64,000 nucleotides of DNA, from positions 21,406,628 through 21,470,627 of the forward strand of contig OZ037767.1 of the NCBI GenBank assembly GCA_964035545.1, written 5' to 3'. The stretch's first letter is position 1. Every line of letters begins with the position of its first letter. Under the pieces are notes generated by a model. It was not told the origin of the DNA, did no database searches, and worked only from the letters and a program-made list of their open reading frames with translations. The DNA is from Bugula neritina. Lineage: Eukaryota > Animalia > Bryozoa. The translations under genes and the position numbers were made by a program. Positions 1 through 34,415 of the stretch are shown here, piece after piece.

Positions 1-3000
1 TTTGTTATTCAAGGTACGTCATAAGTAAATGAGAGTTATAGCTGATATTTAGCCTCGTCAAACAATAGCTAAACTTATCAGCTTCCTGTTGAAACAATCC
101 AAACTTTCACCGGGTTGTTGAATAAAAGATATTTTATTCAAAGCAGTTTTTTATCCCGAAAAACATACTTTAGCGCATATGTGAAGAGATGTGTTAGGGG
201 ACATGTTGAGAGGATAAGTAAGGAGATGTGTTAAGGGGACAGCACACAAAGCTGATCAAAACTAATGAGTTTAGTGCTAAGGTCACCTAGCTGCCCATGA
301 GCTGCCCCTGAGATGTGCATGGTGCTGACACGCATCAACTGTAAATGTAGGGTAATTATGTGTATGTGTGAAGAACCTGGATTGATAATTGAGGATAAGT
401 AGTATGTTGAGATATAATTACATATGTAGATTTCTTGATGGCTTGTTTTATTTACATATGTCCTATAAACGAATACCTTACCTATATTTGTAATTTTCCA
501 ACTCTCTTGATTTTGCTTGCTGACAGCACTGGAATGTCACGGTGCTGTCCCTTGAAGAAGATCCCTCTCCTTACGGCGCCAGGCGAGATGATGCCATATG
601 CTCTCTTTGTCAGCAAAATGGAGTTCATGTCATCAAGCGATGCTCCAACACTCTCTATCCTATAGATAAGTGAGTAGTGGCAACACAAATGTCCATTTAT
701 AGAAATATTGTAGAATGTGCCATGTGATTTGTATTGTGATATGACACGTCATGTCATGTGGTATGGCATGTCACATGATGTGTCGCACTCAATTTCTATT
801 CTAGACTCGTCAACCTGTGCAAGGGTTTTAAACCAATCACCTTACAGAGATTTTACGGCGTCTTTGAAACTGCTGGCTTTCCAGAGTATTGCACTGAGGC
901 TATCGAATTCAACAAGTTGAAAATATCAGCTGATCAATCAGATCATGAAATGAAGTATGGAATATCTACACTAGAACAGCATGGTGTGTATATACTCTAT
1001 ATCTGCACTAGAACAGCATGGTGTGTATATATACTCTATATCTGCACTAGAACAGCATGGTGTGTGTATATACTCTATATCTACACTAGAACAGCATGGT
1101 GTGTATATATACTCTATATCTACACTAGAACAGCATGATGTGTATATATACTCTATATCTACACTAGAACAGCATGATGTGTATATATACTCTATATCTA
1201 CACTAGAACAGTGTATTGTAGGGTTGACCAAGTTGATGGGGTTAAGTAGTGCGTTGTGGCCAGGGGGAGAGACAGAAGCTCTAAGAAGGTTACAGAGTCA
1301 CCTTGAGAGAAGGGTATGTTTACAGTTAGCCTATCATATCTACTGTATGCACATCATTGCATATTTCTCTTGGTATGTTATCAAGTTTTCCCAGGTGTTA
1401 ACAGTTTCAACTGTTTCTATATATGTTCTCGTCACTCCATTCATTGCCATGGTGGGTTGGACACTCGTCGGTAAGTCATTTCTCACTGTATTTATGCATA
1501 GGAATCTACCTCTACCTCGGCCAGGTTACATTTCTAGTGCCTGTACTTGAGAGCAGTTCAACTAGTCTATTGCTAATGATGGAAAACAAATTGTTAATCT
1601 CTTCTTTTATCATTTCTCGATCAATTGAACTTAGATTTTAGCTTTTGTTCTGTATGTTTATAGATGTGGGTGGCATCTTTTGAAGAGAGGCCAAGGCTAA
1701 CACCCGCGTCCCTCCTGCCATCTTCTAATACTCTAACGCCTTACCTTGACCTCGGGTGTCTTTCAGCACGACGACTTTATTACGAGATGAATAACCTTTA
1801 CAGAAGGGTCAGTATATTCACATTGTATTCACGCTTCTTTCTATCTCCATCTTCTGTTTTCCCTCACAATATCTCACCTCTTCAGTTGTCTCCATTTATC
1901 ATGTTTTCACTCCACCTTTTTGCTGCCAGCTAACTTTCTTCTATTTTCTCCCCACATTTTCTTCTTCTGTTTTATTTCATATAGACATAACCCTTGCTTC
2001 CTTATGTTACAGTTGAAGGGTGGCCAGAGCAGACCCCCCACTTCTCTTCATGGACAGTTAGTGATGAGAGAATACTTCTATGTCGCAGCGAATCTGAATG
2101 AGAACTTTGACAGAGTGAAAGGCAACAGCATGTGCATGCCTGTACCATGGAAGAGCGTAGACGAGTTGTCTATGGAAAGAGTCACCTCTGTATGTCTGTC
2201 TGCTTCGCTCAACTATAGACTATTTCCTGTTACAATACCGTGGCAACACTTTTAGTGCTCACTTTGGTATAATTTTGTGGGCCCTGTTTTAGGCAACCAC
2301 TGGTTTTCCATGGATTGACGCCATTTTGAAGCAGCTGGTGTCTGAGGGCTGGATCCACGGTATCTGTAAACATGCTCTTATCAGCTTCATCACTCATGGC
2401 CAGCTCTTCTACTCCTGGGAAGAGGCAGCCAATGTAGGTCACTGCGTCATCATAATTCTCCTCATATACTCTCTATATAGTCTGGAAGGAAATATAATAT
2501 GTATTATATTTGTTTTATATATGTAATATAGATGTATAATATATTATGTCTTATATATGTAATATAGATGTATAATATGTGTTATATTCGTATTATACTC
2601 TACTTACAGCTGCTGGAACGCTATAGTCTGGAGGGAGATATCTGTACAAACAATGGCATAGCCATGCTGCTTTCTGGCAGCTGCTACTCTCGAGCTCTAC
2701 CTAGTGTGGTTCACAGCCCGGTGCTTAGCGGCAAACATGGCAATCTGGGTGTTGAATTGATCAGGTAAGTCTTGTTACACTCGCACTCTAGCAGCTGAAT
2801 GGTAATAGACTATGCATCATGTAATATATAGTGATGGTGTATGCCAGAGCACATGTATCACATTCAGGTAATTGTCTATATGTTGAAGTTGCGTCACAGC
2901 CAGGTGATGGTGACTATATTTTTCTCTGCTATGTCTACTACATTCTCTTTGCCGCAGGAAATGCACTTGTTCGCACATATTGGAGTTTTGTTCTTGTAGG

Positions 3001-8635: not shown

Positions 8636-9325
8636 GTGTTGCTTGAACAAGTAATGTTTATATCTATCCCTGAATATCAAAATCTGGTGAAATTTCATCG
8701 ATTTGAAGCAGAAAAAATGAAATGACAGAAGATTAATAACAAAAGTCTGATACAGGTGCCTCCATATGTACAGGTACCTCTACATACAGGTACGTACAGG
8801 TATACGTTCACATAGAGGCACGTACACGTACCTTTATCAGACTCAATTACACTGTCGTATAAAATAATATAAAGTCATAATATAAAACAAAAAAGCCAAC
8901 TGAGAAATAAATATTCAGAAACAGTTGAATAACTGAAACATGACCCAAGGAAAAGCTACCATCACAGACTTATGCATATTATAAGAGAATTCAGTTTTAA
9001 AGTTCCCTCCACTACAAAATACATGATATAACTATTTATAGCTATTCTACTGCAGCAATCAGTGTTACTTACATTGCAAAGTGAATAGTGTTCAAGAACA
9101 GGAGTTGTCATCTCTACGTAAAAATTAAACTTCTTTATAAGCTACTGGCAGAGTGGGGGGGGGGTTTAAATGCCCATAAATTTAGAGAGCCATACAGTAT
9201 TGGGCTACAGGCTAGAGTTGGCCAGAACAAAAACTAGAAATTAAAACATCTAAGGCTAATAAACAACATAGCATAGCTTAGAATTCAACACAGCACTAGC
9301 GGACTAGCAAATCTAGCCAGTGTAA

Positions 9326-12300
9326 CTAGGAGTTGTCCACACTCAGCAGTTCCATGTTGGATGATTCTGGAATGTCGAATACTAACTTGCGGCGAACATT
9401 ATTTTTTCGCTGCTTCCGATATCGCTTAATAAGTCTCCTCGAGACAACTCCACTGAAACGCACCTTTTTGAGTTTACGAGTCGATGGACGAGAGATGACG
9501 ATGAATCTTTTGGGATGTGAAGTAGTGGGAGTGGACGGCTGTTCATCAGTGAGATTGTGGACAAGGTGGGTGACCTGTAACACAGGAGAGAAGATAACTC
9601 TAGCTGCTAAGTGCAGCTCAATACAATTATTTCCCCTTGTGAATATGCAATGCAAAAAAATCAACTCACACTCTTGTAACGCAAAATATGTAACAAAAAA
9701 AGATAACAGAATAAAACAAAACAAGATAATATAATGAGATAACATAGTATAACGCAGAGATAGAAACACATACTTTGCCACACACTCTATAGACCAGAGT
9801 AGAGATCCTCTCATGTATCTCCTCTGAAGTTAGACCGAGGGCAGAACTGCTCAGCAGCAAATAGTCGTTGGATCTGGTGATTCTAGGCCGGATGTACTCA
9901 ACGTATGCCATTACCACAGCCTTGGCTCTCTCGTCAAAAGCCAAACTTTTCTGCAGCTTACTAATACAAGCTGAGGCTATAGTTGGGCTGGGAATATCTA
10001 TGGCACTCATGCTAATGTACTTATTCGGTGTCACTGGAGACTGACTGTTAGTGTAGTTCTCGTGTGTGTGAGAGGGAGGGGGATCAAGGTCCCGCACCCT
10101 CACCATGTGCACGTAGTCGATGTGCTCAGGCAACAGACGGTACAAGTAGGCGCAGAGGTAGGAAGTGGCGAAGTCTATGTCACATCCCTTCTCCATGGTG
10201 CGCACGTGTTGGCAGTGTGCCAAGTAGTTTATGATGACGTCATACTGAGGGGTGAAGTGAGTCACCGTGGCTTCTATATCGGCCAGTGTGATTGGTGTGC
10301 TTGTGAGGTCAATGCTGATTGGTTGATTGAGAGTAAGAGCTGCTCTGTAATTGGACAGGAGACGTTCAGCTGCAGAATATCTGTTCTCTATAATCCCTAG
10401 AAGAGTTAATTGGTAATATAACATACAATATTAATAATGTATACACACATTTGCACGCACGCACACACACATATATATACATATAATAAAATGAATTTAA
10501 ACATATATTACACAATATAACGTAATATATAACATATTATGTATTATACAATATAACATTATATCTCTCTTGCAGCCAGTCAATGCAACTATGGCTGTTT
10601 CATAGATTTGGCTTGAATTTGGTTGCAGCTCTCCACACAACTCTGTTGTCAGCCGTCTCTTGCCAGAAACACAATGTTATATATTATACAATGAAATGCT
10701 TACTAACCTTTAATGGGAAGCTGGAACTTTCTAAACTCAATAAAGTAATGAAGGGCTTCACATATTCTGGTCTCTGTTTCTAAAGAGTGTCTATCCTGCA
10801 GTAAATAGATTTGTTACGTAGAATTCGCCATTAGCTTTTATATAAACACAAATAGCCGGAAATGCGCAGTGCATAGTGACAACATATACTATAAAAAGGT
10901 TAGTGCTCTGACAGCAGACACCAGTGCTCTGACAGTAGACACCAGTGATCTGACAGTAGACACTGGTGCTCTGACAGTAGACACAAGTGCTCTGACAGTA
11001 GACACCAGTGCTCTGACAGTAGACACCAGTGATCTGACAGTAGACACTGGTGCTCTGACAGTAGACACAAGTGCTCTGACAGCAGACACCAGTGCTCTGA
11101 CAGTAGACACCAGTGATCTGACAGTAGACACTGGTGCTCTGACAGTAGACACCAGTGCTCTGACAGTAGACACAAGTGCTCTGACAGTAAACACCAGCGC
11201 TCCGACAGTAGAAACCAGTGCTCTGACAGTAGACACCAGTGCTCTGACAGTAGACACAAGTGCTCTGACAGTAAACACCAGCGCTCCGACAGTAGAAACC
11301 AGTGCTCCGACAGTAGACACCAGTGCTCTAACAGTAGACACCAGTGCCCTGACAGCAGACACAAGTGCTCTGACAGTAGACACTGGTGCTCTGACAGTAG
11401 ACACCAGTGCTCTAACAGTAGACACCAGTGCCCTGACAGCAGACACAAGTGCTCTGACAGTAGACACTAGTGCTTTGACTACTGCAGTGCTGAATACATG
11501 CACATAGAAGTAGCCCAAGAATCCAAGTCTGTGGGTTAATCAACCAAGCAGCAATAATCTGAACCAGGAAAGTGTTATTATACAACCAAGCTCTGCTAAT
11601 TCTAAAACCAAATTTGGAAACTATAGAAAACATGTAGTAAATTATGGAGTGTAGAAGTGAACATTGTGGTATCAGATGTGACAGTGTACAAGTGAACATT
11701 CCAGTAAAGTATTACAATGGAGAAAATAGCATGAGATGTGGGCTCTGCACCTTTTATACAACTCTTTTCTTCAAGTAATGCAAGTCATGTGATGAGGATA
11801 CTGTGGTGAGGATACTTTGATGAGGGTAGTGTGATGAGGATACTGTGATGAGGATACTGTGATGAGGGTACTGTGATGAGGGTACTGTGATGAGGGTACT
11901 GTGATTAGGGTAGTGTGATGAGGGTAGTGTGATGAGGATACTGTGGTGAGGATACTTTGATGAGGGTAGTGTGATGAGGATACTGTGATGAGGATACTGT
12001 GATGAGGGTACTGTGATGAGGATACTGTGATGAGGGTACTGTGATTAGGGTAGTGTGATGAGGGTAGTGTGATGAGGATACTGTGATGAGGGTACTGTGA
12101 TGAGGGTACTGTGATGAGGATACTGTGATGAGGATACTGTGGTGAGGATACTTTGATGAGGATACTACGATGAGGATACTGTGATGAGGATACTGTGATG
12201 AGGGTACTGTGATGAGGGTACTGTGATGAGGGTACTGTGATTAGGGTAGTGTGATGAGGGTAGTGTGATGAGGATACTGTGATGAGGGTACTGTGATGAG

Positions 12301-23100: not shown

Positions 23101-26100
23101 ATTTATAATATAATAGCAAAAATATAGTAACATTTTAATGTAACATAATATAATATATATTATGATGTGAATATATTCCAAAGTGGAGCACAATGATATT
23201 ATAAGTGTACAAACTATTGTTAAGGAATGCACAGCTATTAGTGTCTCATATTGTATTGTATTACACATAATGTACTGCACACACTGTATTATAATACGTA
23301 GTATTACACACGATGTTTTACACACAGTATATTATAATAATATATAGTATTACACACACTGCACTAGACACACTACATTACACATATTGTATTACACACA
23401 GTATCACACATATTGTATTATACACACTGTATTATACACACTGTGTATTACACACGTGTCTATACATACTCATCATTTGCTTGGCTGGATGAAGCAGTGA
23501 GCTTAGACTTACGGCTAAAGTCAAAATGTCTGTAGTAGTTGATAATAAGTGAAACAGCTAAAGAATTTGCCTGAACAATACAGGAACTCTAACTAATCGT
23601 TTATTTTACTTTGAACTATAAACATCAATTTTACTAATATAACCATTTATCTAAACAATTCTTGTGAACTTTAAACTACGTGGCTTTAAACTTAATTTCA
23701 CCTAAATTTTTAACGAAATGCAGCCAGTCCTTCACAAGTTTCAATTCAACTTGTTCTATTAATTAAGTCAAGTTAGTGCTTTAGGCAAGTTGGTTTTTGT
23801 CAATTATTTTTAAACATTTGAGTTTTGAATATATTGCGCGTGTAACCAGCAACTTTTATTTATTATATAGAAGCCATAAAGGTAGGTAGGGTAGTAGAGG
23901 GTAGGATAGTAGAGGGTAGGGTAGTTGAGAATATTTATAAACAATGAGTAACCTATAATAGTTACTACGTTACGCTCTACTTACACTCTATCTACCACCA
24001 CATAGAACACAGTACAGAGATAACAGACGTGAAGGAAGCAAGAAAAAGATTAAATGGAAAAAGGTTCCGACCAAAAATAAAGTGCATTGGCACTGCAATG
24101 TGGGCTAACATTGACTGTTATAATATGTAGATCTAAATGATACAACAATCAACAGCTATGTAATAGAGCTATCTACTTGTGTCAAACTCTCCAAATTTAT
24201 ATTAGCGTTGGTTAGTATGATGTTGCTTTGTAACCCAGCAACCTACCAAACCGTGCCTGTATGAACAGCTATCTTTGGAACTAGGAGACAAACCAATAAC
24301 TGCATGCAGACCTACATAGTGTGACTATACAAAGCTAACCTATGCAGTGTGACTATACAAAACTATCCTACACCATGTGACCACACAAAGTTTATTTATA
24401 CCACGTGACATTACAAAGCTAGCATACAAATACCATACAGACATATAGGATACATATCATACAAAGATAACTTATATATAGTGTGACCAAACAAAGCTAG
24501 CTTATACAGTGTGACCATACAAAGCTGGCTTATACAGTGTGACCATACAAAGCTAGCTTATACAGTGTGGCCATACAAAGCTAACTTATACAGTGTTACC
24601 AGACAAAGCTAGCTTACACAGTGTGACCACATAAAACTAGCTTATACAGTGTTACCATACAAAGCTAGCTTATACAGTGTGACCATACAAAGATAACTTA
24701 TACAGTGTGACCATACAAAGCTAACTTATACAGTGTTACCACACAAAGCTAGCTTATACAGTGTGACCATACAAAGATAACTTATACAGTGTGACCATAC
24801 AAAGCTAACTTACGTGGCTATTTTTGTGTTTATGTGCAAGAGCTGAGCCATCATATTTTTGAGACCAGCTTTAGTTGAAGAGACGGAGGTTTTACTCAGC
24901 ACCTGTGCCGAAACAATCTCCTGCTCATCAGCACCGTAACTCTTAGCCAAACCTCTCAACCTCTTCACTTCGGCCTGCAGATCTGCGGTTTCCAGCGCAT
25001 ACTGCCTGTATTTCAATACATTATTATAATGAGTATGAAAACTTGCAGTGTTTACAGTCACTAGCCCTGTGAGAACATCATAATAATTATTATAATTCAC
25101 ACTATAATATAGTATTGTGTTATTTACAGTATAAAGTAGGTTTTATATCATAATACACAGTATATACTATTTTGAGATACCAACTAACTTGTTTTTATCC
25201 TCAGCAAGTTTTTTGGATTTTCTCAAGACTCGTAGTCTGAACATCGTCCTAGCTCTCGAGGTAAGCACCATCGCTGTAAAGTAAATATGATGTACAGTAA
25301 ATACCATATGATATGCTGTATAGTAGCTATTATATTATATGCTGTAGCCTATAGTAAATATACTATATTAAATGTTGTATAGTAAATAGTATATTAAATA
25401 CTGCACAGTAAATCATGTGTTATTGCGTATATACTGTACAGTGAATGTTATTGTGTATATACTGTACAGTGAATGTTATTGTGTATATACTATACAGTGA
25501 ATGTTATTGTGTATATACTGTACAGTGAATGTTATTGTGTATATACTATACAGTGAATGTTATTGTGTATATACTGTACAGTGAATGTTATTGTGTATAT
25601 ACTATACAGTGAATGTTATTGTGTATATACTGTACAGTGAATGTTATTGTGTATATACTATACAGTGAATGTTATTGTGTATATACTGTACAGTGAATGT
25701 TATTGTGTATATACTATACAGTGAATGTTATTGTGTATATACTGTACAGTGAATGTTATTGTGTATATACTATACAGTGAATGTTATTGAGTATATACTG
25801 TACAGTGAATGTTATTGTGTATATACTATACAGTGAACGTTATTGTGTATATAATGTGCTAGTAAACATACGCTCACCATTCAATATTCTGATGACCCTC
25901 CAAATAAGAAAAACTATGAGCACTGTTTGACCAAATCCTTGAGTGAAGTTAACATCAGTGACTGCCCAGTCCAATGAGAAAGATATTATGATGACAATGC
26001 CGTCTATTACCTGCATTATGTAATATATTATAATGACAATACCTTCTATTACATATTTTATGTAATATATTATGATGACAATACCATATGTTATAAGCTG

Positions 26101-29100
26101 TTTAATATCAGATAATTAGACAATGACTAGAAGAATTTAATTACCTCCCACTTGTTGGTAAAGTAAGACTTTCCATATCCAATAATTTTTAATAAAACCT
26201 AAAATAAATATTCAATAAAATTATCATGGCTTTGTTATTATACAAAAACCAATATTATATTAATTATAATACTATTCTTGTTGTATTTTACTAGACATGC
26301 GCACACACACACTGTATATATAACATGTAGATGTACAATGTACATGCACGCACGCACGTGCACACACTGTATATATAAAATGTATATAGGCTATACAATG
26401 TACACATAAGCACAAACATGCACCGCATACACTGCTCACCCGCACGCACATATAAACATCTATATTATATATTATATATTGTATATAGAAAAATAATAAA
26501 TGAATACAAATTACAATATTGCCATAGATACAAACCTCCACTACAAAGACCGCCAGTATAGCGATACTACAGTAATGAAGAACACTATTGGCGTTTAATG
26601 AAGTGTGAATTCGCTTTGCCAAAACATACGTGTCGTGTTGGCCAAAGTCTTCTCTTTGAGGTGGACCAGAACTCGGTGCTGCTCTCTTATGTCTGGTGCT
26701 GCCTAACAGTATATGTGACTAGTAATATAATAATATAACACATCCATGATCACTAATATACTATATAATTACTAATATACTATATAATTACTAATATACT
26801 ATATAATTACTAATATGTTATATAATTGTTAATATACTATATAATTACTAATATACTATATATTTGCTAATATACTGTATAATTACTAATATTAGTAATT
26901 ACTAATATGTTATATAATTACTAATATACTATACGATTACAAATATATTATATGAATACTAAAATGCTATATGAATACAAATATACTATATGATACAAGG
27001 GCACACCTGATAGAGTTCTGTTCAAATTACTATGATGTAACATTTCGGTATATGCCTCGTCTATACTCGAAACACTAACAATTTCTCGTTCGACATTTGG
27101 CCAAGTTTGATTTAGATAGTTCAGAACTTCTGCGCCTTTTTCCTTTACAAGATCCAGGTTTTCTAAAACAATAAGATTCAATCTAAATAATATCCAGTAT
27201 ATCTCACCTTCAGTTATATACATGTCTAGTACTACTCAGTATATCTCACCTTCAGCTATATACATGTCTAGTAGTACTCAGTATATCTCACCTTCAGCTA
27301 TATACATGTCTAGTAGTACTCAGTATATCTCACCTTCAGCTATATACATGTCTAGTACTACTCAGTATATCTCACCTTCAGCTATATACATGTCTAGTAG
27401 TACTCAGTATATCTCACCTTCAGCTATATACATGCCTAGTAGTACTCAGTATATCTCACCTTCAGCTATATACATGTCTAGTAGTACTCAGTATATCTCA
27501 CCTTCAGCTATATGCATGTCTAGTACTACTCAGTATATCTCACCTTCAGCTATATACATGTCTAGTAGTACTCAGTATATCTCACCTTCAGCTATATACA
27601 TGTCTAGTAGTACTCAGTATATCTCACCTTCAGCTATATACATGTCTAGTAGTACTCAGTATATCTCACCTTCAGCTATATACATGTCTAGTACTACTCA
27701 GTATATCTCACCTTCAGCTATATACATGTCTAGTAGTACTCAGTATATCTCACCTTCAGCTATATACATGTCTAGTACTACTCAGTATATCTCACCTTCA
27801 GCTATATACATGTCTAGTACTACTCAGTATATCTCACCTTCAGCTATATACATGTCTAGTAGTACTCAGTATATCTCACCTTCAGCTATATACATGTCTA
27901 GTAGTACTCAGTATATCTCACCTTCAGCTATATACATGTCTAGTACTACTCAGTATATCTCACCTTCAGCTATATACATGTCTAGTACTACTCAGTATAT
28001 CTCACCTTCAGCTATATACATGTCTAGTAGTACTCAGTATATCTCACCTTCAGCTATATACATGTCTAGTACCATCATGCCCAGCACCAACAAGACGTCT
28101 AAGACTACCAAAGACATCATGAACACCTCCACCGGCATCGTGTGCAGGAAATGCACCATTCTCTGCCTCCATCTACCAAACATTGTACATTACAAGATCA
28201 TATAAAGTAACCTGCATGTATATTACTTTATATTATAATATAGATATATTCATAAAAAGTAATAAGGTTCGTTAATAGGTACCTTTACTATTTTCAGTCA
28301 GAAATTCAATTTGGTCGAGTTTAAAATTTCACTGAGGGGCATTGCACTGTAAAAGCCATTAGTCAAAATTCAGGCTTGTGATAACTTGATCAATTGACTT
28401 TAAAATATTAATCAATGGAAATGATAAATCTTTCTAAATATAGGCATTTATTAATCACATTATAACGAAGAGACGTTTTACTTAAAAATTTGCTAAATAA
28501 CGCTTGAGTGAATCAAGGAAAAGCTTTATGTTTATAATTATATTGGCTACCTTTTTCAATTATCGCTTTTATGCTGTCAACTTTACTAATTTATTACGTT
28601 TTAAATGGTCTCATTAACGAACCAATATAAATATATATGATGTAATATACATGTAGGATATACCATTTTTGCCCATGTTCTACTTCTTAAGGCCAGTAAT
28701 TGCACTGAATTTCGCAACATGTTTTCATGTCTGTGATATGTGATAAATCAATCAATCAATAATTATAATGTCTGCTTATGTCGGGTACATGCAGACGTGT
28801 CTGTATCAGTACTCACGTTATAGCTCGCAAGTCGTACTCCTCGGACAGCTGGGCAATTTCTTCTCCTATAATCTTCTTGTCAACATTGTCTTCACCCAGT
28901 TCTTGCAGCAATTTAGTGTCCACTCCTTGAATTCCTTGCCCTTTCAGTTCACTTCTGTAAAACCATTGATTGTAAAGTCTTTATCCATCTACATTCTATA
29001 CAGAGTATACAATATATTATAGTTTATATATCCCTCTACACAGAGTATATGTGTTGAATGTTTATATTTCCATCTAAACAGAGTATATAATATATTATAT

Positions 29101-32043: not shown

Positions 32044-34415
32044 CACACACACAACACACACCCAACACACACAACACAGCACATTCACACAACACACACC
32101 ACACACATACAATACAGCACATTCACACAACACACAATCTAATTGTAATATTATTAGCATGAAACTCATAATTTTTCCTCTTCCTACATATTTCTGTGAT
32201 ATGGAATATAGCTTATGTAAACTTGATATTATTGATGTGATAGTTCTGTAATTACTTTTAATTAAACACAAGGAGATCTCTTTGAAATATTATACTCCTC
32301 TACTTACTTATAGGTCATATTGCAATATGATAACACAAGCCCTTTTGTTTTAGAGGTGAAGGAATAAAAAGCACTATAAGTGTAATAGTATGCATGATCT
32401 TATTGCATTTCATAATTCAACAATGTAACATAATTGAAAAGGACTTCAATTCTTATAGAAGCTAATTGAAAAACCATGAAGAGTTATTGTATTTTTTACA
32501 TTGCTCTCTACATTATAAGGTATGCTTTATAAAACAGCTTGGTTAGCGTATCCTGTTTAGATGCTGCTTAATTAGTCTATTGTGTATTATAATATCAATT
32601 AAAATTTTATCAAATGGCTAAATTGGCTAAATTGTGCAACCTTAAAACTGGAAGCATATTAAAATGTCCCTATCAATCTAAAATAGAATCATCTACTGGG
32701 CATGAAGTTGTACTTCAAGACTCACAAGTAAATGTTGTGGGTCTTGGTATAGGTTTCAGCCACGTTGTGGGAAGTATTCTGATTAGCCTCAGCATAATAG
32801 CACTAGTCTATAAATCTAAATGACACAGCTGTTCCTTCCTTAGCTTTTTGATTTTTCATTTTTTCCAAGATTAAACCATCTAATAATTGGTATAAAAATT
32901 ATTGACCTCATTTATATTGAGGGATTAGGTTATATCACCAGTATAATTTAGTACGCTCTACTGATTGATTCCTTGTTAGACCAAAGACTGTTAAAAGCAA
33001 ATGACTGTCGGACTATTTCCCTACAAAAATTCATTTGGTTTTGAATAGTAAATCTGCATGAATTTGGCTGCCCTATTTCTAGTTGCTACTAAACTGTTAG
33101 ACACAGCATATTTATATAGCCATACTGCTTTGAGCACTAATCTACTTCGACTAATTATTAGGCAACAACAACTAAATAGGAAAATAATTAGAAAAATAAT
33201 TTCCATGTTAAGATTATTTAGCTAATTGTATCTGTTACCTAGCTTGCTTTAAATGAAGTCAAATCTGCTAATAATTTGTTATGCCAGATTCTCATACTAT
33301 CTCACTAAATCTCCTCCCATATCATAGCCTGATAACATACATCAAGTGTGCTGCTGCATGAGTAGTCTAATGCTTTCTAGTTGTGATAATTCTATTTTGA
33401 ATAAACTTTTAAAAATTATAATAATATATTGGCGTTAGGGCATACATACAGGTTTGCATACTCGTTTAGCCTAACTTCCCCCAATTAACAAAGTAATAAT
33501 TACTGTCAAGTAACTCCTAAACACACTTTGCCGCATCGAAAGCTGCAGTAGCAACTGACAGTCATTTTTAAAACTGCCCGAGCTTCCCGTATGGCATTAC
33601 GGTACGTCAGGATCAAGCACTGCTTGATTAAAAAAAGTTTCTTAGGTCATCTATTGGACAGAAAGACATTCGATTCAACTCTTTGGATATAAATATTCAA
33701 TGAGGTGTCATAGATCGTACCCAATAGCGGACTTTGAGAACTTCAGTCCAGACACATTAAAAATGGCCGAAATTCGACGTTATGGCCTACGTTAGGTTAA
33801 AGTGTGTTTAAGGGGTTAGTTAGACTACTAGTGAACTGCATGCACCACACCAGTACTGTGTATCCCCTCTTAGAGTTTTGACTCCCTATTATTCACCATT
33901 GATATAAGAACTCTGCTCAAACTTCCCTATTAGCTTATAACTGAGACACAGAACTGCATATTGACATTGCAAAGCTCTGATGGGATTCAAATGCAAGACT
34001 CATCTATACATTTATTTGTAGTACAAATAATGTGTGATTATTAACATTATTACTTCTTCTTAGAGACTAATTTAGTACATCTTCACTAAACGTAGTACTA
34101 AACATAATTCTAACATAGATTCCTCTATAAACTTTACATATACCCTTTTTTCAAAACCTTACTATTTTATTATTATATGAACGGGACATCTATACAGGCA
34201 ACCTCTACCCACCGTAATGTTCTTTGTAAGGCTAGTCTAGTTCGTAAGCTTGGATAGTTGTCCTCCGACTTTTTACATCGACAAAGCAGTATGTTAATCA
34301 ATGAGAATTTTCCCTTTTCTTCAGTCTCATAGTCAGAGAGATCGGATGTGACTGGATTAGCTGACTCAATTATATCCTTGATTCCTTTCACTTTGGCCTG
34401 GCGCTTCATCTTCAT
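20188..34415 (-). CDS. HVCN1: Voltage-gated proton channel Hv1-family (voltage-sensor-only) protein, ~811 aa with first exon A
   Basis: Exons (5'->3') 34415-34213, 28954-28817, 28172-28048, 27162-27007, 26702-26536, 26198-26145, 26010-25878, 25273-25189, 25005-24814, 23529-23470, 22621-22369, 21057-20188 (TGA). Total 2436 nt, all GT-AG and phase-consistent. S1 MMSLVVLDVLLVLGMMVLD (Hv1 D112 equivalent present). S2 VLHYCSIAILAVFVVEVLLK (F150/E153 equivalents). S3 KWEVIDGIVIIISFSLD. S4 LIVFLIWRVIRILNA, followed by a coiled-coil-like segment (LQAEVKRLRGL). No S5-S6 pore domain. The symbol denotes the family; exact orthology is unresolved. Confidence 0.88.
21108..21280. repeat. 20 bp minisatellite, intronic
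   Basis: Tandem GTGACTGAACTAGAGTAGKA. Confidence 0.85.
24310..24812. repeat. 28 bp minisatellite starting at the Hv donor site (24813) and decaying distally
   Basis: Unit TATACAGTGTGACCATACAAAGCTAGCT. Copies are homogeneous near the exon and degenerate below ~24480. Confidence 0.88.
25425..25855. repeat. 28 bp minisatellite with a 56 bp higher-order dimer
   Basis: Unit ATACTRTACAGTGAATGTTATTGTGTAT, with R alternating G/A in successive copies. Confidence 0.92.
26750..26945. repeat. 19 bp AT-rich minisatellite
   Basis: Tandem TACTAATATACTATATAAT. Confidence 0.85.
27195..28072 (-). repeat. 42 bp minisatellite (~20-21 copies) built from the Hv S1-exon 3' end plus its splice donor
   Basis: Minus-strand unit CTAGACATGTATATAGCTGAAG|GTGAGATATACTGAGTASTA. 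It explains the antisense 327-aa ORF 27222-28205. Confidence 0.96.
31935..32140. repeat. (CA)n compound microsatellite
   Basis: Visible directly in the sequence. Confidence 0.95.
33514..33815. mobile_element. Degenerate piggyBac-like MITE (tentative)
   Basis: Left end CTCCTAAACACACTTT versus right end AAAGTGTGTTTAAGGGG (imperfect TIR). Flanks GTAA and TTAG resemble a decayed TTAA TSD. Confidence 0.4.

What the first reader, a model, noticed from the sequence alone, without database searches (positions are those of the whole stretch)
25878..28172. Proton channel with a two-arginine S4 (LIWRVIR) and co-loss of the S1 countercharge
Seen: S4 reads LIVFLIWRVIRILN versus the canonical LILLRLWRVARIIN, so R1 (human R205) is Leu (25888-25908). 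In S1 the E119-equivalent is Met, while the D112, D123, H140, F150, E153, D174, D185, W207 and N214 equivalents are kept. Established: RxWRxxR plus the S1 Asp define Hv1. I recall a molluscan paralogue (Aplysia Hv3) with an LPWRxxR S4 and leaky gating, so this may be a related lophotrochozoan subtype. Inference: the paired loss of R1 and E119 points to an adapted, weakly voltage-dependent or leak-type proton channel.
Basis: partly seen in the sequence, partly recalled or inferred. Interest (0 to 1): 0.8.

Follow-up and report, generated by a model that had tools for sequence, protein, structure and literature searches.

The report
Bryozoan two-arginine proton-channel paralogue

Summary
On the minus strand, 25878-28172 holds five exons of an Hv1-type voltage sensor. 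S4 reads LIWRVIR, with Leu at R1 (25906-25908), and Met replaces E119 (28076-28078). D112, D123, H140, F150, E153, D174, D185, W207 and N214 are kept.

The full model has eight exons with AG/GT borders and a 350-codon open frame. A metagenome contig has the same exon plan at 55% identity, with synonymous sites saturated, so the gene is under purifying selection.

The genome is a bryozoan's and holds five Hv-like genes: two keep R1 and three have Leu there. The window gene forms a clade with one R1-less paralogue. By motifs read by eye, it matches the 'unconventional' lophotrochozoan Hv channels without the S4 proline, as listed in a 2023 review.

The 'paired loss' is not a rule. This genome has R/E, R/S, L/M, L/M and L/E at R1/E119, and Aplysia AcHv3 keeps E119.

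The most likely function is proton conduction with shallow voltage dependence and possibly a leak, as in AcHv3 and human R205W. This is inferred, not shown.

All three R1-less paralogues and the metagenome orthologue carry a furin-type site in the S1-S2 loop.

The scan had already noted two other Hv-like genes of this genome.

The parts
32308..32318 (-). Speculative first coding exon (ATG plus 8 nt, then a gtaagt donor, phase 2) that would supply Met-Thr-Tyr-Lys before exon E0
   Evidence: Regex scan of the upstream minus strand. It is the only candidate whose phase fits E0 without a stop. No RNA or comparative support.
28817..28954 (-). Exon E0: cytoplasmic N-terminus with the ED-N-VD ... EE-I motif
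   Evidence: 59% identical to the collinear exon of L009. AG/GT borders, with a phase that fits E1.
28048..28172 (-). Exon E1: S1 helix with the selectivity-filter Asp (28097-28099), Met at the E119 position (28076-28078) and Asp at the D123 position (28064-28066)
27007..27162 (-). Exon E2: first half of the roughly 97-residue extracellular S1-S2 loop, with two N-x-T sequons
   Evidence: A weak (31%) but collinear match in L009.
26536..26702 (-). Exon E3: second half of the loop, beginning with the furin-type site R-H-K-R (26683-26694) followed by Ala-Ala-Pro, then S2 with His140-, Phe150- and Glu153-equivalents
   Evidence: An R-x-[KR]-R then Ala-Ala site is also present in L009, C1a and C1b.
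26145..26198 (-). Exon E4: S2-S3 linker (18 codons)
   Evidence: 72% identical to L009 and 67% to L011.
25878..26010 (-). Exon E5: S3 (Asp174- and Asp185-equivalents), an S3-S4 loop with an N-F-T sequon, and S4 reading LIWRVIR-ILN with Leu at R1 (25906-25908)
25189..25273 (-). Exon E6: basic helix that continues S4, the most conserved part of the protein
   Evidence: 90% identical to L009 and 88% to L011. The donor was chosen by comparison with L009 and L011.
24810..25005 (-). Exon E7: coiled-coil-like C-terminus with the GL-x-N-MM motif. The stop codon at 24810-24812 is conserved in position in L009.
27195..28071 (.). 42-bp tandem array (20.9 copies, 98% matches) that fills intron 1 and runs 24 bases into exon E1, so the exon end and its 5' splice site are repeated about 20 times

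Best explanation
The stretch is the voltage-sensor core of an intact gene of about 353 codons in a cheilostome-type bryozoan. The gene is a compact member of the 'unconventional' lophotrochozoan branch of the Hv proton-channel family. Shown: it has four transmembrane helices and no pore domain. It keeps the S1 aspartate that makes Hv1 proton-selective, the charge-transfer centre (Phe, Glu, Asp), the S4 Trp, R2, R3 and Asn. It has Leu at R1 and Met at E119. Its S1-S2 loop is about 97 residues long, with sequons and a furin-type site, and a basic helix and coiled-coil-like tail follow S4. Inferred: it forms dimers and conducts protons through each voltage sensor. With only two gating arginines per subunit it moves less charge, so conductance should depend only weakly on voltage and may persist at rest (a proton leak). 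This is what was measured for Aplysia AcHv3 and for human Hv1 R205W. The Met at E119 removes the partner that R1 (or, in R205W, R2) pairs with in the activated state. Together with Thr at the H193 position it removes two of the four Zn2+ ligands, so weaker Zn2+ block is expected. The loop may be cut by a proprotein convertase on the way through the secretory pathway.
For: Gene reality: eight exons, all with AG/GT borders, join into a 1053-nt open frame. L009 has the same exon lengths and phases and a stop at the same place. The two are 55% identical in protein, with pN 0.29 against saturated pS 0.80. Family: the only PDB matches are Hv1. The in-script spliced model is 31-37% identical to canonical Hv1 from S2 through the coiled coil. 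All key residues align. Subfamily: it forms a clade with L009 (100/99) and with the R1-less paralogue C1a (98-100/99). A clade of all four R1-less sequences is not rejected (p-AU 0.53). By eye, motifs are shared with the no-proline relatives from Lingula, Eisenia and Dendrobeania. Function by analogy: AcHv3 lacks R1, and its proton conductance changes e-fold per about 60 mV, against 4-6 mV for AcHv1 and AcHv2, with a proton-selective leak. Human R205W leaks when closed and loses voltage dependence, and R1 pairs with E119 in the activated state in molecular dynamics. R205A lowers the effective charge from 0.90 to 0.57. Zn2+ ligands are E119, D123, H140 and H193 in human numbering; here they read Met, Asp, His and Thr.
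Against: No current has been measured and no transcript was seen. A search of 1.84 billion cluster representatives found only unspliced exon fragments of orthologues. AcHv3's odd gating may owe much to Pro430, which is Ile here. Single Arg-to-Ala mutants of Hv1 were reported not to leak. The hydrophobic-gasket positions that I recall (V109, F150, V177, V178) read Val, Phe, Val, Ile here, so a leak through a breached gasket is not predicted. HVRP1/TMEM266 did not conduct even after an Asp was put at the D112 position, so keeping that Asp does not prove conduction. Grouping with AcHv3 rests on motifs read by eye from a machine-read PDF, not on a tree.
Confidence: 0.55

Rival explanations
1. It is a voltage-sensor protein that no longer conducts protons. 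It would act as a TMEM266-like sensor or as a partner or regulator of the canonical channel through its coiled coil. The extra hydrophobic residues (Leu at R1, Met at E119) would thicken the outer hydrophobic layer and close the water wire.
For: TMEM266/HVRP1 shows that an Hv1-like sensor with a coiled coil can be non-conducting, even with Asp placed at the D112 position. The TMEM266 homology model has a thicker hydrophobic layer above the charge-transfer centre. NCBI names the similar Lingula protein 'C15orf27 homolog'. The paralogue C1b has also lost E153, which suggests that the branch is drifting away from channel function.
Against: The window protein keeps Asp at D112, plus R2, R3, Trp, Asn and the whole charge-transfer centre under strong purifying selection. 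It has none of the TMEM266 marks: Val at D112, three Arg, Glu118 and a tail of about 300 residues. The only tested member of the R1-less branch, AcHv3, does conduct protons.
Confidence: 0.22
2. It is an ordinary voltage-gated proton channel whose gating is close to normal. R2 and R3 would carry enough charge, and the Leu/Met pair would be a neutral or merely kinetic change.
For: Human R205A still gates with voltage, and Arg-to-Ala mutants did not leak. The gasket and the charge-transfer centre are intact here. E119 varies independently of R1 in this genome: C4b has R1 with Ser at E119.
Against: Both natural and engineered hydrophobic replacements of R1 that were measured (AcHv3 Leu, human R205W) gave weak voltage dependence and a leak. 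The loss of R1 has been kept in three paralogues and in several species.
Confidence: 0.18
3. It is a decaying or unexpressed gene copy, and the odd residues are simply damage.
For: There is no transcript evidence. Tandem repeats have invaded almost every intron and reach into exon ends.
Against: The frame is open across eight exons with canonical splice sites. The structure and stop codon are the same in a relative at saturated synonymous divergence, with pN 0.29. The odd residues are themselves conserved.
Confidence: 0.03

Closest known systems
No-proline 'unconventional' Hv channels of Bryozoa, Annelida and Brachiopoda. They are listed, not characterised, in Chaves et al. 2023 (PMC10377628): Dendrobeania fruticosa GJXY01243660, Eisenia fetida GIUK01058977 and Lingula anatina LOC106155662.
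   Same: Leu at R1 with no Pro after it. A long S1-S2 loop with a polybasic site. An N-terminal ED-x-[VI]D motif. A basic helix after S4 and a C-terminal G-L/I-x-S/N-M motif (compared by eye). The Dendrobeania sequence is the orthologue of this genome's paralogue C1a, the sister of the window gene in the tree.
   Different: The window gene is much smaller, at about 353 residues, and stops right after the C-terminal motif, so it lacks the 'large intracellular domains' named in the review. This gene type is not among the three Dendrobeania sequences printed there. The review counts three Hv genes in Bryozoa, and this genome has five.
Aplysia californica AcHv3 (LOC101855857), the only measured R1-less Hv channel (PMC10911540)
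   Same: R1 replaced by Leu. S1 Asp, Trp, R2 and R3 kept. An enlarged S1-S2 loop holding a polybasic site (RRRKR in the printed sequence). A predicted coiled coil.
   Different: AcHv3 has Pro after the Leu (LPWRxxR), keeps Glu at E119, has a 299-residue loop and a 535-residue C-terminus, and is 980 residues long. The window protein has Ile instead of Pro, Met at E119, a loop of about 97 residues and a tail of about 90.
Canonical Hv1 (HVCN1; the bryozoan copy lies at G000:C4:23136090-23136716)
   Same: A four-helix sensor without a pore domain. D112, D123, H140, F150, E153, D174, D185, W207, R2, R3 and N214 are all present. Homology runs through the coiled coil.
   Different: R1 and E119 are lost, the H193-equivalent is Thr, Gly215 is Ala, the loop is eight-fold longer, and the gene sits on a long separate branch in the tree.
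Human Hv1 cancer mutant R205W (PMC11853527)
   Same: A hydrophobic side chain at R1.
   Different: It is a single engineered change in an otherwise canonical channel that still has E119, and R2 takes over the E119 contact.
TMEM266 / HVRP1 / C15orf27
   Same: An Hv1-like sensor plus a coiled coil. From my memory of Musset et al. 2011, not checked here, it also has Ala at the Gly215 position.
   Different: TMEM266 has Val at D112, three S4 Arg, Glu118, a disordered tail of about 300 residues, and is reported from vertebrates only.

Membership tests
Hv (voltage-gated proton channel) family | Four-helix voltage-sensor domain with no S5-S6 pore domain | tested here: met
   Four hydrophobic segments in the spliced model. 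The frame ends about 90 residues after S4 at a stop conserved in L009.
Hv (voltage-gated proton channel) family | Aspartate in mid-S1 (human D112), the selectivity filter | tested here: met
   GAC at 28097-28099, aligned with D112 in all canonical rows.
Hv (voltage-gated proton channel) family | S4 signature RxWRxxR | tested here: not met
   It reads LIWRVIR. Trp, R2 and R3 are present and R1 is Leu. AcHv3, a measured proton channel, fails this feature in the same way.
Hv (voltage-gated proton channel) family | Charge-transfer centre and inner countercharges (F150, E153, D174) and Asn214 | tested here: met
Hv (voltage-gated proton channel) family | C-terminal coiled coil continuing S4 | tested here: inconclusive
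   BLASTP homology to canonical Hv1 runs through the coiled-coil region, for example residues 171-327 against 88-242 of a nemertean Hv1. No coiled-coil predictor or fold was run.
Hv (voltage-gated proton channel) family | Proton-selective, pH-gradient-dependent current | not testable with these tools
   Needs patch clamp.
Molluscan Hv3 type (AcHv3) | R1 replaced by a hydrophobic residue | tested here: met
   Leu at 25906-25908; AcHv3 has L429.
Molluscan Hv3 type (AcHv3) | Proline before the S4 Trp (xPWRxxR) | tested here: not met
   Ile here, and Met, Leu or Ser in relatives. The review says bryozoan members lack it.
Molluscan Hv3 type (AcHv3) | Very large S1-S2 loop and large intracellular domains | tested here: inconclusive
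   The loop is enlarged (about 97 residues, against about 12 in human Hv1 from my knowledge and 299 in AcHv3). The termini are short, at about 50 and 90 residues.
Molluscan Hv3 type (AcHv3) | Grouping with AcHv3 in a tree | not testable with these tools
   No AcHv3-type sequence could be obtained by reference. The length filter of the word search and the listing limit kept them out. Only a by-eye motif comparison with the printed sequences was possible.
TMEM266 / HVRP1 | Non-acidic residue (Val in human) at the D112 position | tested here: not met
   Asp here; Val111 in HVRP1.
TMEM266 / HVRP1 | Three S4 arginines and Glu118 kept | tested here: not met
   Two Arg, and Met at that position; TMEM266 has R208, R211, R214 and E118.
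TMEM266 / HVRP1 | Grouping with vertebrate TMEM266 in a tree | not testable with these tools

The most novel reading that the evidence does not exclude
The R1-less Hv branch may be made as a precursor that a furin-type convertase cuts in the extracellular S1-S2 loop. The mature protein would then be a split voltage sensor (S1 held non-covalently against S2-S4), or it would shed part of the loop. The site R-x-[KR]-R followed by Ala-Ala(-Pro) is present in all four R1-less sequences read here: window RHKR, L009 RRRR, C1a RNRR and C1b RSKR. It is absent from both R1-bearing paralogues. Polybasic sites also appear in the printed loops of AcHv3 and of the Dendrobeania and Eisenia relatives. Neither of the two Hv papers I searched for these terms mentions cleavage of these channels.
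Probability: 0.25. Interest if true: 0.6.

Novelty: new member of a known kind. Interest (0 to 1): 0.4.

Why it matters
R1 and its outer countercharges are central to current models of how Hv1 senses voltage and stays shut. Only one natural R1-less channel (AcHv3) has been measured, and its phenotype is confounded by an S4 proline and by very large extra domains. This bryozoan gene offers the same loss of R1 in a small, nearly canonical framework, without the proline and with the R1 partner E119 also gone. The same genome also provides the other natural combinations: R/E, R/S and L/E. That set would allow a clean test of what R1 and E119 each contribute to gating charge, closed-state leak and Zn2+ block. 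It also raises the count of bryozoan Hv genes from three to five. The shared furin-type site in the loop is a lead for a processing step that the Hv papers I searched do not mention.

Tried and rejected
- **Pfam on single exons.** This gave nothing. Only the contiguous canonical paralogue reaches PF00520.
- **Exhaustive representative search with the 44-residue S3-S4 exon.** It returned five unspliced exon fragments and one spurious ankyrin protein. No full-length or spliced relative was found.
- **Word search with the canonical paralogue and with alignment A1.** Both returned canonical Hv1 and Hv2-like proteins only. AcHv3-type and TMEM266 proteins were not listed, so no tree with them could be built.
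- **Third word search.** It was not spent. Alignments A2 and A3, meant to make an 'unconventional-only' profile, were misaligned (fragments piled on S2-S3) and would have given a meaningless profile.
- **ESM Atlas search with the S4 exon.** It was uninformative, with a best score of 0.87.
- **Contigs of three further orthologous fragments.** They were too short to hold the S1 exon.
- **Joined model.** It was never sent to a search or folding tool, so there is no structure prediction. It was joined only inside scripts, from window coordinates, for the frame check, dN/dS, BLASTP against fetched proteins and the trees.
- **Rejected readings.** A TMEM266 orthologue was rejected because the defining residues are not met. 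A pseudogene was rejected because of purifying selection.
Full report
**What is there**

The window is AT-rich (65%) eukaryotic DNA full of tandem repeats. On the minus strand, 28172 to 25878 holds five exons with AG/GT borders. The finding's two ends are exactly the acceptor of the first exon and the donor of the last. Translated exon by exon, they give S1, a long loop, S2, the S2-S3 linker and S3-S4 of an Hv1-type voltage sensor.

The only solved structures that match the S3-S4 exon are mouse and human Hv1 (3WKV and 5OQK). Their E-values are weak (0.13 and 0.4) because the query has only 44 residues. In an alignment with six canonical Hv1 proteins, the exon pieces fall cleanly into place (A1).
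- S4 reads LIWRVIR-ILN. Its Trp and Asn are aligned to W207 and N214, so the two arginines are R2 and R3 and the R1 position is Leu.
- In S1 the D112 and D123 positions are Asp, and the E119 position is Met.
- The equivalents of H140, F150, E153, D174 and D185 are all kept.

The codons were checked one by one.

**The whole gene**

I compared the window with a metagenome contig that carries an orthologue (L009, found through fragment P0001). This showed three more conserved, collinear exons: an N-terminal exon, a post-S4 exon that is 90% identical, and a last exon whose stop codon sits at the same place.
- All eight exons have canonical borders and join into an open frame of 1053 nt.
- L009 has exons of 138, 125, 150, 164, 54, 133, 85 and 196 nt. 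The window has 138, 125, 156, 167, 54, 133, 85 and 196 nt, in the same phases.
- The two proteins are 55% identical. The proportion of synonymous differences is 0.80, which is saturated, against 0.29 for non-synonymous differences.

The gene has therefore been kept by purifying selection over a long time, and Leu at R1 and Met at E119 have been kept with it. Three further orthologous S3-S4 exons from other assemblies also read FLMWRxxRILN.

The start codon lies in an unseen upstream exon. One candidate at 32318 fits the phase but has no other support. I joined exons only inside scripts, from window coordinates.

**Whose genome, and how many relatives**

Earlier notes of this scan call the genome a bryozoan's. 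[quoted passage not shown]

Searches of the window's own genome with the exons and with profile A1 found five Hv-like genes:

| Gene | Position | S4 | E119 position | Other changes |
|---|---|---|---|---|
| C4a | C4, 23.14 Mb | RLWRIGR (canonical) | Glu | none |
| C4b | C4, 24.08 Mb | RLWRFVR | Ser | none noted |
| Window gene | C3 | LIWRVIR | Met | none |
| C1a | C1, 18.05 Mb | LLWRILR | Met | Met at F150 |
| C1b | C1, 32.70 Mb | LSWRVVR | Glu kept | Asn at E153 |

The scan had already noted C1a, and probably C1b, on other windows. The 2023 review of Hv channels counts three genes in Bryozoa. The three Dendrobeania transcripts printed in its supplement correspond to C4a, C1a and C1b. The window gene's type is not printed there.

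**Where it belongs**

I built maximum-likelihood trees of the spliced model with canonical Hv1 from sponges to mammals and with Hv2-like gastropod proteins.
- The window gene groups with L009 (support 100/99) and then with C1a (98-100/99). This clade sits on a long branch outside all canonical Hv1, including the bryozoan one.
- Holding all four R1-less sequences together costs no likelihood (p-AU 0.53). Long branches make this weak evidence.

Instead I read the sequences printed in the review's supplement by eye. The text is machine-read, and highlighted letters in S4 are often dropped. The window protein shares these features with Lingula LOC106155662, Eisenia GIUK01058977 and Dendrobeania GJXY01243660:
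- an N-terminal ED-x-[VI]D ... EE motif;
- Leu at R1 with no proline after it;
- Ala or Gly then a basic helix after the S4 Asn;
- a motif like LRGL-x-K/R-x-YGA;
- a C-terminal G-L/I-x-x-M motif.

This is the group the review describes as Hv channels of Annelida, Bryozoa and Nemertea with large loops but without the S4 proline of molluscan Hv3. The window gene is a short member of that group. Its loop has about 97 residues and its tail about 90, and the protein ends right after the last shared motif.

NCBI calls the Lingula protein a 'C15orf27 homolog'. The window protein nevertheless fails every residue that marks TMEM266: Val at D112, three S4 arginines and Glu118.

**The 'paired loss'**

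The two changes are not coupled, however.
- This genome alone has all four combinations of R1 present or absent with E119 present or absent (see the table above).
- In the printed sequences AcHv3, two other R1-less Aplysia genes, one Lingula gene and the Eisenia relative keep Glu at E119.
- One Aplysia gene has Gln there and the Lingula 'C15orf27 homolog' has Leu.

The simplest reading is that R1 was lost once, early in this branch. E119, freed of its partner, was then replaced several times. That is relaxation or fine-tuning, not a concerted adaptation.

**How it probably works**

Shown:
- The selectivity-filter Asp, R2, R3, the Trp, the Asn and the charge-transfer centre are intact and conserved.
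- Two of the four Zn2+ ligands are gone: Met at E119 and Thr at H193.

Inferred from measured relatives:
- AcHv3 conducts protons, but conductance changes e-fold per about 60 mV instead of 4-6 mV. It also has a standing proton leak.
- Human R205W leaks when closed and loses voltage dependence.
- R205A lowers the effective charge.

I therefore expect a proton-conducting dimer with shallow voltage dependence, perhaps open at rest, with weak Zn2+ block. Like AcHv3, it is perhaps used in internal membranes.

Cautions:
- The proline suspected of shaping AcHv3's behaviour is absent.
- Arg-to-Ala mutants did not leak.
- The gasket residues are intact.
- HVRP1 shows that an Hv1-like sensor can be silent even with the Asp.

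I put 0.55 on the conducting, weakly gated reading. I put 0.22 on a non-conducting sensor, 0.18 on near-normal gating and 0.03 on a dead gene.

**A lead seen on the way**

All four R1-less sequences read here have a furin-type site followed by Ala-Ala in the S1-S2 loop, 20-40 residues before S2. The sites are RHKR in the window (26683-26694), RRRR in L009, RNRR in C1a and RSKR in C1b.
- The two R1-bearing paralogues have none.
- The loops carry N-glycosylation sequons, as expected for a luminal or extracellular segment.
- Polybasic sites also stand in the printed loops of AcHv3 and of the Dendrobeania and Eisenia relatives.
- The AcHv3 paper and the review do not mention furin or convertases.

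Cleavage would give a split voltage sensor. This is untested.

**Verdict**

It is a new, compact member of an already reported invertebrate branch of the Hv family, not a new kind of channel. Its value is as a clean natural variant for testing the roles of R1 and E119. No RNA evidence, no fold and no tree with AcHv3 or TMEM266 could be obtained.

Noticed in passing
window 27195-28071 (also 25983-26085 and 24310-24813): Tandem arrays start exactly at exon borders of this gene. A 42-bp array (20.9 copies, 98% matches) includes the last 24 bases of exon E1 and its 5' splice site, so the donor is repeated about 20 times. Only the first copy gives an open frame. A second 42-bp array (2.5 copies) includes the acceptor and the first 27 bases of exon E5. 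A 28-bp array abuts the stop codon.
   Followed up: partly
window 26683-26694; L009:4182-4193; L014 within 861-1172 (minus strand); L028 within 9045-9404: A furin-type site, R-x-[KR]-R followed by Ala-Ala(-Pro), is conserved in the S1-S2 loop of all three R1-less paralogues of this genome and of the L009 orthologue. It is absent from the two paralogues that keep R1.
   Followed up: partly
G000:C4:24080059-24081530 (L017, L026, L030): A second Hv gene with a full RLWRFVR S4, but with Ser at the E119 position and Glu at the D123 position. It lies about 0.95 Mb from the canonical gene on the same contig. With it the genome has five Hv-like genes, against three reported for Bryozoa.
   Followed up: partly
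G000:C1:32697600-32700300 (L028, L029): A very divergent R1-less paralogue (S4 reads LSWRVVR). It has Arg at the H140 position and Asn at the E153 position but keeps Glu at E119. It is the orthologue of Dendrobeania GJXY01200275, whose printed S4 looks worse than it really is because the machine-read PDF drops highlighted letters.
   Followed up: partly
G000:C1:14144995-14145345 (L025): A weak match (E = 7.5e-4) of the Hv profile to another voltage-sensor-like stretch with two in-frame TGA codons. It is probably an exon pair of a different ion-channel gene.
   Followed up: no
L009 and L010 (JGI metagenomes 3300022223 and 3300022205), L011 and L033 (ENA), L031 and L032 (Logan): Environmental 'metagenome' contigs carry intron-bearing animal genes orthologous to the window gene, presumably DNA of bryozoans or similar animals in the samples.
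   Followed up: no
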